From: Diadema antillarum
Taxonomy: Eukaryota
Direction: 5' to 3'
DNA length: 64,000 nucleotides
Assembly (NCBI RefSeq): GCF_040938485.1
Contig: NW_027272185.1
Span: 434,001 to 498,000 of the forward strand
The translations under genes were made by a program, and so were the position numbers. The stretch's first letter is position 1, and the number at the start of each line of letters is the position of its first letter. The notes under the pieces are model-generated. The model did no database searches, was not told the DNA's origin, and saw only the letters and a list, made by a program, of their open reading frames with translations. Positions 10,993 to 11,170 of this stretch are shown here, one piece after another.

Positions 10993-11170
10993 AGGAATAA
11001 CGCATTCCGCGGAGTTGTTAAGCGAGTATGCAGAGTGCATGTACGAGAGGTTTCTTCTGAGCATGCGCACTCCACACGAGCCGGAGGCGAGTGTGGAGTG
11101 TGCATGCGAAGAGGAAACCTCAGGTGCACTGCATACTCGCTTAACAATGACGGGAAAATGCGTTATTCCT
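10993..11170 (+). repeat. 178-bp imperfect palindrome at the left end of the YR element
   Basis: Perfect arms 10993-11006/11157-11170 (14 bp) and 11015-11033/11129-11147 (19 bp). A 17-bp inner arm has one G.T pair, and the apex is GCC-GGA-GGC at 11080-11088. Confidence 0.95.

What the first reader, a model, noticed from the sequence alone, without database searches (positions are those of the whole stretch)
11074..11094. Covarying, strand-specific DNA hairpin apex (sheared GA pairs plus GNA triloop) shared by both elements
The YR element apex is CAC-GA-GCC-GGA-GGC-GA-GTG (11075-11093). The non-coding element apex is CAC-GA-GGC-GCA-GCC-GA-GTG (25201-25219). The middle stem pair swaps C-G for G-C (compensatory), while the C(GNA)G triloop and tandem GA/GA mismatches are kept. 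Established: d(GNA) triloops closed by C-G and tandem sheared G.A pairs are unusually stable in DNA, whereas the complementary strand (TNC loop, TC/TC) is not. The inner arms also have G.T wobbles on the same (+) strand. One B-arm mismatch (A11182 opposite C) favours the other strand. In the YR element the favoured strand is antisense to the ORF, so selection on mRNA structure is unlikely. Inference: the apex nucleates folding or cruciform extrusion on one chosen DNA strand.
Basis: partly seen in the sequence, partly recalled or inferred. Interest (0 to 1): 0.75.

Follow-up and report, generated by a model that had tools for sequence, protein, structure and literature searches.

The report
Conserved strand-specific hairpin tip of Crypton transposons
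The two look-alike 19-base strings are the tips of a long DNA hairpin that ends a family of tyrosine-recombinase (Crypton) transposons. The hairpin is kept from corals to sea urchins, with non-standard G·A pairs on one strand only, which suggests these animal transposons work through a folded single strand.

Summary
Observation confirmed and widened. Paralogous empty sites in a segmental duplication show two independent insertions. One is a Crypton-type tyrosine-recombinase (YR) element, 10990-13465. The other is a 618-bp non-coding relative, 25121-25738. Each begins with a ~185-nt hairpin.

The genome (probably Diadema) holds about 2570 copies of CACGAG-N7-CGAGTG, with compensatory inner stems GCC/GGC, GGC/GCC and GTC/GAC. 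Related YR genes in Strongylocentrotus, Patiria, Pecten, Magallana and the coral Paramuricea carry the same hairpin. It always lies downstream of the gene, with CGAG..loop..CGAG on the strand antisense to it.

Across 11 representative hairpins, symmetric mismatches are 56 G·A/A·G against 1 C·T, and 13 G·T against 3 A·C. In the apex alignment, 15 of 18 stem pairs show double changes. Most apexes match the known ultra-stable DNA mini-hairpin GCGNAGC/GCGNNAGC.

Caveats:
- The loop is not invariant: AGA in one subfamily, TTTA in Pecten.
- Nearest-neighbour energies barely separate the strands.
- RNA is not excluded.
- The nucleation role is inference.

The Crypton papers I could search report no terminal repeats in animal Cryptons. 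The scan's index gave no match on other DNA; two first-reader notes cover the same elements in this window.

The parts
11075..11093 (+). Apex of the hairpin of element A: C-G closed GGA triloop, 3-bp stem GCC/GGC, tandem G·A step (G11078 A11079 opposite G11089 A11090), CAC/GTG
10990..11177 (+). Whole terminal hairpin of element A (arms about 10990-11082 and 11086-11177). Further tandem G·A steps: TGAG 11058-11061 opposite CGAA 11107-11110; CGAG 11044-11047 opposite 11121-11124 (mutated to CAGG in this copy, CGAG in the family consensus); GA 11012-11013 opposite GA 11149-11150
10990..13465 (-). Element A: decayed Crypton-type tyrosine-recombinase transposon, 5'-TATAGG ... TTATGA-3' on the + strand (family consensus ends TTATAA). 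Inserted as one unit relative to the paralogous empty site at 25957/25961
11464..12883 (-). Frameshifted remains of the YR gene (Phage_integrase, DUF3504 and QRICH1-like). The hairpin lies 3' of it, with the G·A strand antisense to it
11170..11195 (+). Internal inverted copy of the right terminus of element A, directly after the hairpin
13440..13465 (+). Right terminus of element A, complementary to 11170-11195
25201..25219 (+). Apex of the hairpin of element B: contains GCGCAGC (the GCGNAGC mini-hairpin), tandem G·A step G25204 A25205 opposite G25215 A25216
25121..25299 (+). Terminal hairpin of element B. Second tandem G·A step CGAG 25171-25174 opposite CGAG 25245-25248. Outer purine-rich loop AGA 25142-25144 opposite GAAATA 25276-25281
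25121..25738 (+). Element B: 618-bp non-autonomous element, 5'-TATACAAATG ... CCCATTTTATAA-3', no target duplication, empty site in the paralogue at 10767/10768. More than 1000 copies in the genome
25298..25313 (+). Internal inverted copy of the right terminus of element B
25726..25738 (+). Right terminus of element B, complementary to 25298-25313. Joined directly to a left terminus in head-to-tail arrays elsewhere in the genome

Best explanation
The 19-mer is the tip of a conserved cis-acting hairpin that forms one terminus of a clade of Crypton (CryptonA/DUF3504-type) tyrosine-recombinase transposons and their non-autonomous derivatives. The selected form is a folded single strand, most likely DNA, of the strand antisense to the recombinase gene.

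The tip is a C-G closed GNA or GNNA loop, in most families the literal DNA mini-hairpin GCGNAGC/GCGNNAGC. It sits on a 5'-Y-GA-R-3' tandem G·A step. Two or three more such steps lie down the ~85-bp stem, typically 27-30 nt apart in most families. These keep the top-strand stem continuous. The complementary strand gets T·C/C·T bubbles instead, so the two strands are structurally distinguishable.

Inferred mechanism: when that strand is unwound, the tip folds first and zips up the stem. The stem then continues into pairing between the element's right end and an internal inverted copy of it. This places both termini (TTATAA^ and ^TATA) side by side next to a small bubble. The recombinase can then join them into a circle, and later insert the circle at TA(T/G)^N7-TA targets without duplication.

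Shown: the structure, its covariation, the strand bias, the termini, the head-to-tail junctions and the target pattern. Inferred: single-strandedness, DNA rather than RNA, nucleation by the tip, and the recombinase acting on the fold.
For: - Both elements are insertions bounded by paralogous empty sites, and the hairpin starts at the very first base.
- Hairpin plus YR gene move together: seven full-length copies (the window's plus six others), and internal-deletion derivatives keep the hairpin and the right end.
- The hairpin lies downstream of the YR gene, with CGAG..loop..CGAG on the antisense strand, in S. purpuratus, Patiria, Magallana, Pecten and Paramuricea. The inverted copy of the far terminus was found in S. 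purpuratus, Patiria and Pecten.
- Covariation: 15 of 18 apex-proximal pairs have double changes, score 0.815 against 0.20 shuffled. RNAalifold on 7 whole hairpins gives 54 pairs, 35 with compensatory changes.
- Strand bias over 11 hairpins: G·A/A·G 56 against C·T/T·C 1, and G·T 13 against A·C 3. Dropping the two near-duplicate families gives 44:0 and 11:3. 21 of 22 GA/GA loops have the Y-GA-R context.
- The top strand is predicted more stable in 11 of 11 hairpins.
- The apex matches GCGNAGC/GCGNNAGC. Tm is 76.5 C for GCGAAGC, 71-72 C for GCGATAGC and GCGACAGC, but 39 C for r(GCGAAAGC) (PMC13037366). This favours DNA.
- Copies whose inner hairpin is flipped exist but are rare (about 5-8%) and singletons. 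Polarity is the same in every family and species, so flipped elements apparently do not propagate.
- Exact TTATAA|TATAC junctions occur in tandem arrays and in independent Logan contigs.
Against: - No direct evidence of a single-stranded or circular intermediate. Every full-length family-A copy recovered here is frameshifted, including the window's; activity of the other families was not tested.
- The nearest-neighbour DNA model gives the apex only 0.4 kcal/mol in favour of the top strand. For whole hairpins the gap is 0.2-6.4 kcal/mol out of about 52-79, so both strands would fold.
- The loop is not invariant: AGA in a 16-copy subfamily of family A, TTTA in Pecten.
- PMC5449611 reports the complement of GCGGAGC as about equally stable.
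- Three related YR loci (Holothuria, Amphiura, Limulus) showed no such hairpin.
- Sequence alone cannot separate DNA from RNA, and the read data were uninformative.
Confidence: 0.55

Rival explanations
1. Single-strand origin or priming signal. The element passes through a single-stranded circle, and the hairpin with its mini-hairpin tip is where complementary-strand synthesis (or transcription) starts, as at phage G4 ori, RSF1010 ssiA or phage N4 promoters. It is not itself the recombination site.
For: - Mini-hairpins of exactly this type, including CCGAAGG, mark ssDNA priming and promoter sites (PMC13037366).
- In a circle or tandem array the hairpin lies just upstream of the YR gene's 5' end.
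- The strand bias fits any single-strand function.
Against: - The element's join maps into the extended stem beside a bubble, and both termini are defined by the hairpin base. A mere origin would not require this.
- No primase or Rep gene is present in the element.
Confidence: 0.15
2. Duplex-level asymmetry marks. The GA/GA 'mismatches' matter in double-stranded DNA, where they make the two arms of the palindrome different (a GA arm and a TC arm). A protein can then act on one arm only, as with the GA/GAA bubble of the minute-virus-of-mice left telomere (own knowledge).
For: - The asymmetric positions are invariant while the rest of the arms drift.
- The crossover lies in one arm only.
- Flipped copies show the arms can recombine.
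Against: - Any non-palindromic dinucleotide would serve, yet 56 of 57 G·A- or C·T-type oppositions are G·A, and 21 of 22 GA/GA loops have the Y-GA-R context.
- The flanking pairs covary (CGAG/CGAG against TGAG/CGAA), so the two arms often differ in sequence while keeping pairing.
- About 85 bp of freely covarying stem argues for selection on base pairing itself.
Confidence: 0.12
3. Structured RNA. An antisense transcript folds into the hairpin (tandem G·A is also stable in RNA) and acts as a regulatory or small-RNA precursor.
For: - RNA parameters also favour the top strand, by 0.6-16 kcal/mol.
- G·U wobbles and tandem G·A are classic RNA features.
- Weak generic miRNA-precursor matches appear.
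Against: - All Rfam matches are far below the gathering scores and hit both strands.
- The loops are GNA/GNNA (GATA, GACA), not GNRA.
- r(GCGAAAGC) melts at 39 C against 76.5 C for the DNA version.
- The elements encode only a DNA recombinase.
- The only putative RNA run covered internal parts of element B, not the hairpin.
Confidence: 0.1
4. No function: a palindrome inherited from a common ancestor, or a foldback MITE that landed next to the YR gene.
For: Most copies are decaying repeats.
Against: - Insertion as one unit, shown by empty sites.
- Same position and polarity in six distant taxa.
- Massive compensatory change with invariant CGAG steps.
- Extreme strand bias.
Confidence: 0.03

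Closest known systems
Crypton transposons, CryptonA / DUF3504 group (Goodwin 2003; Kojima and Jurka 2011, PMC3212892)
   Same: Single gene for a tyrosine recombinase with Phage_integrase and DUF3504 signatures. No reverse transcriptase and no target-site duplication. Non-autonomous derivatives far outnumber autonomous copies. A circular intermediate is proposed.
   Different: The literature says animal Cryptons have no terminal repeats of any kind. These elements have a ~185-nt terminal hairpin, an internal inverted copy of the other terminus, and invariant 5'-TATA ... TTATAA-3' ends.
Integron attC sites and the CTX-phi attP(+) site (own knowledge)
   Same: An imperfect palindrome used by a tyrosine recombinase. 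Only one strand's fold carries the distinguishing non-Watson-Crick features. The crossover point lies in the stem next to an unpaired region, and little target homology is needed.
   Different: Bacterial systems, unrelated recombinases (IntI, XerCD), 60-140-nt sites with extrahelical bases rather than tandem G·A steps. Here recombination on single-stranded DNA is not demonstrated.
Mini-hairpin DNA GCGNAGC / GCGNNAGC (Hirao and colleagues; PMC13037366) and C-G closed d(GNA) loops (PMC3201870)
   Same: Apexes of families B, C and E, and of Patiria, S. purpuratus and Paramuricea, contain the literal motif. Families A and D and the oyster keep the C-GNA-G core. Known natural uses are all on single-stranded DNA: G4 ori, ssiA, N4 promoters.
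   Different: Here the mini-hairpin caps an 85-bp stem and is flanked by a tandem G·A step. It is found in an animal transposon. Its stability was not measured.
DIRS1 internal complementary region (own knowledge: Cappello 1985; Poulter and Goodwin 2005)
   Same: A YR element carrying an internal sequence complementary to its two termini. This is proposed to align the ends of a single-stranded intermediate for circle formation.
   Different: DIRS elements are retrotransposons with RT and RNase H, and their intermediate is cDNA. Here there is no RT, and the complementary region continues into a long hairpin.
Parvovirus and Streptomyces telomere hairpins (PMC5449611; own knowledge for MVM)
   Same: Single-strand hairpins with GNA loops closed by sheared G·A. 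There are purine-rich mismatched bubbles that give polarity, and flip/flop inversion of the hairpin.
   Different: Those sit at the ends of linear replicons and are processed by HUH nickases or terminal proteins. Here flipped forms are only about 5-8% of copies, not half, and the enzyme is a tyrosine recombinase.

Membership tests
Crypton (CryptonA) DNA transposon | Encodes a tyrosine recombinase as its only enzyme | tested here: met
   PF00589 at 27.3 bits (cut-off 27.1) plus DUF3504 on the best copy. Relatives P0006, P0007 and P0080 pass DUF3504. No RT or other domain in the 2.5-kb element.
Crypton (CryptonA) DNA transposon | Catalytic R-H-R-Y tetrad intact | tested here: inconclusive
   An HxLR and ...GH...Y stretch is visible in the translation, but no residue-level alignment was made, and every copy examined is frameshifted.
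Crypton (CryptonA) DNA transposon | No target-site duplication | tested here: met
   Empty site against filled site for element B, and 58 distinct insertions with unrelated flanks.
Crypton (CryptonA) DNA transposon | No terminal inverted or long repeats (as described for animal Cryptons) | tested here: not met
   Terminal hairpin plus a 13-37-bp inverted copy of the other end. This departs from the published description, not from the enzyme-based definition.
Mini-hairpin DNA (GCGNAGC / GCGNNAGC) | Sequence motif | tested here: met
   GCGCAGC (B), GCGAAGC (C, E, Patiria), GCGATAGC (S. purpuratus), GCGACAGC (Paramuricea). Core only in A (CCGGAGG), D (TCGAAGA) and the oyster. Absent in Pecten (TTTA).
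Mini-hairpin DNA (GCGNAGC / GCGNNAGC) | Extraordinary thermal and nuclease stability of the DNA strand | not testable with these tools
   The ViennaRNA DNA parameters carry no such bonus. Tm values are from the literature only.
Tandem sheared G·A step | 5'-pyrimidine-GA-purine-3' on both strands | tested here: met
   21 of 22 GA/GA 2x2 loops in 11 hairpins. The sheared geometry itself is not testable here.
Folded single-strand recombination site (attC / CTX attP type) | Imperfect palindrome maintained by compensatory change | tested here: met
Folded single-strand recombination site (attC / CTX attP type) | Strand-specific structural marks | tested here: met
   56:1 G·A against C·T. Same polarity relative to the gene in six taxa.
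Folded single-strand recombination site (attC / CTX attP type) | Crossover point inside the folded stem | tested here: met
   The junction TTATAA|TATA pairs with the internal copy, leaving a TAT/T (B) or TATA/TT (A) bubble at the join. This is by sequence only.
Folded single-strand recombination site (attC / CTX attP type) | Recombinase acts on single-stranded substrate | not testable with these tools
   Needs biochemistry.
Rfam RNA families (miRNA precursors) | Score at or above the family gathering threshold | tested here: not met
   Best match is 46.9 bits against 105 (MIR3440). The others are 12-32 bits, on both strands.

The most novel reading that the evidence does not exclude
A widespread clade of animal DNA transposons (Cnidaria, Mollusca, Echinodermata) transposes through a folded single-stranded DNA intermediate handled by a tyrosine recombinase. 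This would be a eukaryotic counterpart of integron attC and CTX-phi recombination. Strand choice would be encoded by tandem sheared G·A steps and a GCGNAGC mini-hairpin, and the ends would be aligned on an internal complementary splint, as proposed for DIRS1.
Probability: 0.4. Interest if true: 0.9.

Novelty: new variant of a known kind. Interest (0 to 1): 0.8.

Why it matters
How Cryptons move has never been shown, and the key survey states that animal Cryptons have no terminal structure at all. This work finds a precisely bounded cis-element conserved from corals to sea urchins, with an unmistakable single-strand signature.

That turns a vague model ('excised as a circle by the recombinase') into testable predictions:
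- which strand is used;
- which bases are cut (TTATAA^ / ^TATA);
- which mutations should kill transposition (G·A steps, hairpin polarity).

It would also be the first eukaryotic case of tyrosine-recombinase action on folded DNA. It links Cryptons mechanistically to DIRS retrotransposons, and it gives a natural biological role in animals for the GCGNAGC mini-hairpin.

Practically, the motif plus the termini allow automatic annotation of thousands of currently unclassified MITE-like repeats and of Crypton-derived tandem arrays.

Tried and rejected
- My first genome pattern used N9 instead of N7 by miscount. It found none of the elements and served as a spacing control.
- Nearest-neighbour folding of the apex on both strands cannot test the thermodynamic claim, because the parameter set lacks sheared G·A and GNA terms. 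I rely on comparative counts instead.
- Rfam gave only sub-threshold generic hairpin hits.
- The look-up of sequencing runs and read laying were uninformative. The only raw-read run laid no reads. Logan contigs break at the palindrome. A putative RNA library covered internal parts of element B but not the hairpin. So there is no verdict on expression, strand or circles beyond contigs that carry the head-to-tail junction.
- YR relatives from Holothuria, Amphiura and Limulus showed no hairpin within the flanks fetched. They may be spliced, domesticated or decayed copies, and I did not pursue them.
- No upstream partner of the internal repeat was found in the oyster and coral loci.
- Literature searches for Crypton with hairpin, palindrome, stem-loop or attC found no description of this structure. 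Repbase entries could not be consulted.
- I considered K-turn geometry for the outer GA/GAAA loop and rejected it, because the extra bases lie 3' rather than 5' of the GA.
- I considered a protelomerase-type site and rejected it, because the join is not at the dyad centre and only one strand carries the marks.
- A words look-up of the scan's own index found nothing further.

Full report
**1. What is at the coordinates**

The two strings are exactly as described, at 11075-11093 and 25201-25219. Each is the centre of a long imperfect palindrome, 10990-11177 and 25121-25299.

The window is animal DNA:
- It carries intronless rhodopsin-type receptor genes, a Gypsy retroelement and a tyrosine-recombinase (YR) gene remnant.
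- A protein in the public collection named from Diadema antillarum matches at 98%.
- The assembly is 1.75 Gb.

**2. Two independent insertions with exact boundaries**

Bases 1-17725 are duplicated at 20793-31045. Comparing the two copies gives paralogous empty sites.

- Element B (25121-25738, 618 bp) is absent between 10767 and 10768 of copy 1. There is no target duplication.
- Element A is absent at 25957/25961 of copy 2.

About 30 genomic copies of family A fix its ends as 5'-TATAGG ... CATCTTATAA-3'. That places element A at 10990-13465 in the window, where the last hexamer is mutated to TTATGA. Element B runs 5'-TATACAAATG ... CCCATTTTATAA-3'.

In both elements the hairpin begins at the first base. 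Directly after the hairpin lies an inverted copy of the right terminus: 11170-11195 against 13440-13465, and 25298-25313 against 25726-25738.

Joining right end to left end would therefore extend the palindrome by 13-26 bp in these two elements. It would leave a small bubble at the join, TATA/TT in A and TAT/T in B.

That exact join, TTATAA|TATAC, exists in head-to-tail arrays in the genome. It also appears in contigs of an independent DNA run.

**3. The hairpin belongs to the YR element**

- Six other full-length copies of family A carry hairpin plus YR gene. Most other copies are internal deletions that keep about 360 bp on the left, with the hairpin, and about 125 bp on the right.
- The protein has Phage_integrase and DUF3504 signatures.
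- Its relatives are the KIAA1958 / ZMYM / QRICH1-like Crypton proteins of echinoderms, molluscs and others.

**4. Copies and families in the genome**

CACGAG-N7-CGAGTG occurs 2570 times against 121 for the control. The variants are:

| Inner stem and loop | Family | Count or note |
|---|---|---|
| GGC-GAA-GCC | C1 and E (at least two families with quite different arms) | 1640 exact copies |
| GGC-GCA-GCC | B | most of the remaining ~785 matches |
| GTC-GAA-GAC | D | about 35 copies |
| GCC-GGA-GGC | A | 7 of the 25 hairpin copies aligned |

So the middle pair of the 3-bp stem is G-C, C-G or T-A, always complementary. CGAG on both sides stays fixed.

**5. Other animals**

I fetched DNA around YR relatives. 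A hairpin of the same build lies a few hundred bases downstream of the gene in five taxa. In each, the G·A-bearing strand is antisense to the gene.

| Taxon | Apex on the antisense strand |
|---|---|
| S. purpuratus | CGAG-GC-GATA-GC-CGAG |
| Patiria miniata | identical 19-mer CACGAGGCGAAGCCGAGTG |
| Magallana gigas | CAAG-GCC-GAA-GGC-CGAG |
| Pecten maximus | CGAG-GGC-TTTA-GCC-CGAG |
| Paramuricea clavata (octocoral) | CGAG-GC-GACA-GC-CGAG |

The left terminus TATAC, and the TTTTATA(TA)A that follows the hairpin, are also shared. The inverted copy of the far terminus was confirmed in S. purpuratus, Patiria and Pecten. Loci from Holothuria, Amphiura and Limulus showed no hairpin.

**6. Covariation**

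On 12 apex-centred segments (alignment A1), the stated structure performs as follows:
- 91.2% of cells pair, against 59.3% after shuffling.
- 15 of 18 pairs have changes on both sides.
- The covariation score is 0.815 against 0.203, and 0 of 500 shuffles reach it.
- Slid controls score 0.08-0.18.

RNAalifold on seven whole hairpins from Diadema, Strongylocentrotus, Patiria and Paramuricea predicts 54 pairs, 35 of them with compensatory changes. The arms drift freely while pairing is kept. The CGAG steps and the loop-closing pairs hardly change.

**7. Strand asymmetry**

I folded 11 representative hairpins and listed the opposed bases in symmetric internal loops.

| Opposition on the top strand | Count | Mirror type | Count |
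|---|---|---|---|
| G·A / A·G | 56 | C·T / T·C | 1 |
| G·T | 13 | A·C | 3 |

Without the two families closely related to B, the counts are 44:0 and 11:3.

There are 22 GA/GA 2x2 loops, and 21 have the 5'-Y-GA-R-3' context on both strands. Flanking pairs covary (CGAG/CGAG against TGAG/CGAA). In most families the steps lie 27-30 nt apart along the arm: outer, middle and apex.

Neutral decay of a palindrome would give mirror-symmetric mismatch types. Arm-to-arm copying would erase the mismatches altogether. Neither is seen.

**8. Energies**

The top strand is predicted more stable than the bottom in 11 of 11 hairpins. The gap is 0.2-6.4 kcal/mol with DNA parameters and 0.6-16.4 with RNA parameters. 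For the apex 25-mers it is only 0.4 kcal/mol.

The model has no terms for sheared G·A or GNA loops, so it cannot test the physical claim. Both strands would clearly fold.

**9. Literature on the motif**

- The mini-hairpin review defines GCGNAGC and GCGNNAGC as extraordinarily stable DNA hairpins. It lists Tm 76.5 C for GCGAAGC, 72.0 C for GCGACAGC, 71.0 C for GCGATAGC and 65 C for CCGAAAGG.
- It gives only 39 C for r(GCGAAAGC). Its natural examples are all on single-stranded DNA: G4 origin, ssiA with CCGAAGG, and N4 promoters (PMC13037366).
- Most apexes here are literal instances of the motif.
- Caveat: PMC5449611 cites NMR work in which the complement of GCGGAGC forms an equally stable 3-nt loop. 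The loop alone may therefore not discriminate the strands, but the tandem G·A steps should.

**10. Exceptions and flips**

The loop is AGA in 16 of 25 family-A copies. This looks like a subfamily rather than independent CpG decay, because the mirror product TG is never seen. Pecten has TTTA.

Three independent copies have the inner part of the hairpin inverted relative to the rest of the element:
- the whole hairpin in L040/L044;
- the inner ~90 nt in L091;
- only the apex in L075.

That is 2 of 32 copies in family B and 2 of 24 in the C/E sample. So the arms do recombine or switch templates. Yet polarity relative to the gene is the same in every family and taxon. This argues that flipped elements do not propagate.

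**11. Targets**

58 distinct insertions give the pattern TA(T/G)^N7-TA. T occurs 41 times and A 44 times at positions -3/-2. T occurs 48 times and A 39 times at +8/+9. There is no duplication. This looks like a recombinase core site with a 7-bp spacer and exchange at one boundary.

**12. Known or new**

Kojima and Jurka (PMC3212892) state that no terminal repeats were found in animal Cryptons. A 2026 CryptonA paper repeats that Cryptons lack terminal inverted repeats. Searches combining Crypton with hairpin, palindrome, stem-loop or attC found nothing relevant. Repbase could not be checked. Rfam has no matching family.

**13. Reading**

The best-supported account is a cis-acting hairpin whose selected form is the folded strand antisense to the gene, most likely DNA. 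The apex acts as a fast-folding, strand-marking cap. The fold brings both termini together on an internal complementary copy for the recombinase.

The structure, strand bias, termini, junctions and target pattern are shown. Single-strandedness, the nucleation role and the enzymology are inferred.

The rivals cannot be excluded by sequence alone:
- a single-strand priming or promoter signal;
- duplex-level arm asymmetry as in parvovirus telomeres;
- a structured antisense RNA.

The scan's own notes on this window (s1-229741, s1-229790) describe the same element architecture. My independent boundary and junction analysis agrees with them.

Noticed in passing
L094 and L095 (G000:C7:5010100-5012300, C15:6342200-6344400): Head-to-tail tandem arrays of B-type elements (638-643-bp period) with exact TTATAA|TATAC junctions. 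An oyster satellitome paper lists a 673-bp 'DNA/Crypton' satellite, CgiSat40 (PMC8268682), which may be the same phenomenon.
   Followed up: partly
L040/L044, L075, L091: Copies in which the whole hairpin, the inner ~90 nt, or only the 19-nt apex is inverted relative to the element. These are three independent events, about 5-8% of the copies sampled.
   Followed up: yes
flanks of 58 insertions in loci L004-L093; window 25109-25120 and 25739-25750: Insertion-site pattern TA(T/G)^N7-TA with no target duplication. It looks like a recombinase core with a 7-bp spacer.
   Followed up: partly
window 1-17725 and 20793-31045: Segmental duplication (91-95% identity) carrying paralogous rhodopsin-type receptor genes at 13491-14618 and 26003-27124, both on the - strand. 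Copy 1 additionally holds a ~7-kb Gypsy-type retroelement (about 2853-9931; gag-RT-RNaseH-integrase ORFs 5372-9390).
   Followed up: partly
window 13491-14618 with 11464-12883: A public gene model, 'thyrotropin-releasing hormone receptor-like [Diadema antillarum]' (P0067, 462 aa), matches the Crypton recombinase query at 98% over a third of its length while carrying 7tm domains. It is probably a chimeric annotation fusing the receptor with the neighbouring transposon.
   Followed up: no
circle or tandem junction, e.g. L094:829-860: Joining the ends creates TATAA|TATA(C), a TATA-box-like string that would lie upstream of the recombinase gene with the hairpin just beyond it. A junction-dependent promoter is conceivable.
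   Followed up: no
window 9960-10455 and 23899-24768: Clusters of short TAACGTTAGG-type inverted and direct repeats shared by both duplicated copies, upstream of both insertions. Nature unknown.
   Followed up: no
window 18505-19139 and 50561-51616: Two tandem-repeat blocks with periods of about 155-165 bp and about 150 bp.
   Followed up: no
G000 loci pairs such as L005/L006, L007/L008, L015/L016, L094/L095: Many insertions occur twice with identical flanks on different contigs. This suggests unpurged haplotigs or recent large duplications in the 1.75-Gb assembly, so copy counts are inflated accordingly.
   Followed up: no
window 44779-44920: Run of 142 N (assembly gap or masked). Left untouched.
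   Followed up: no
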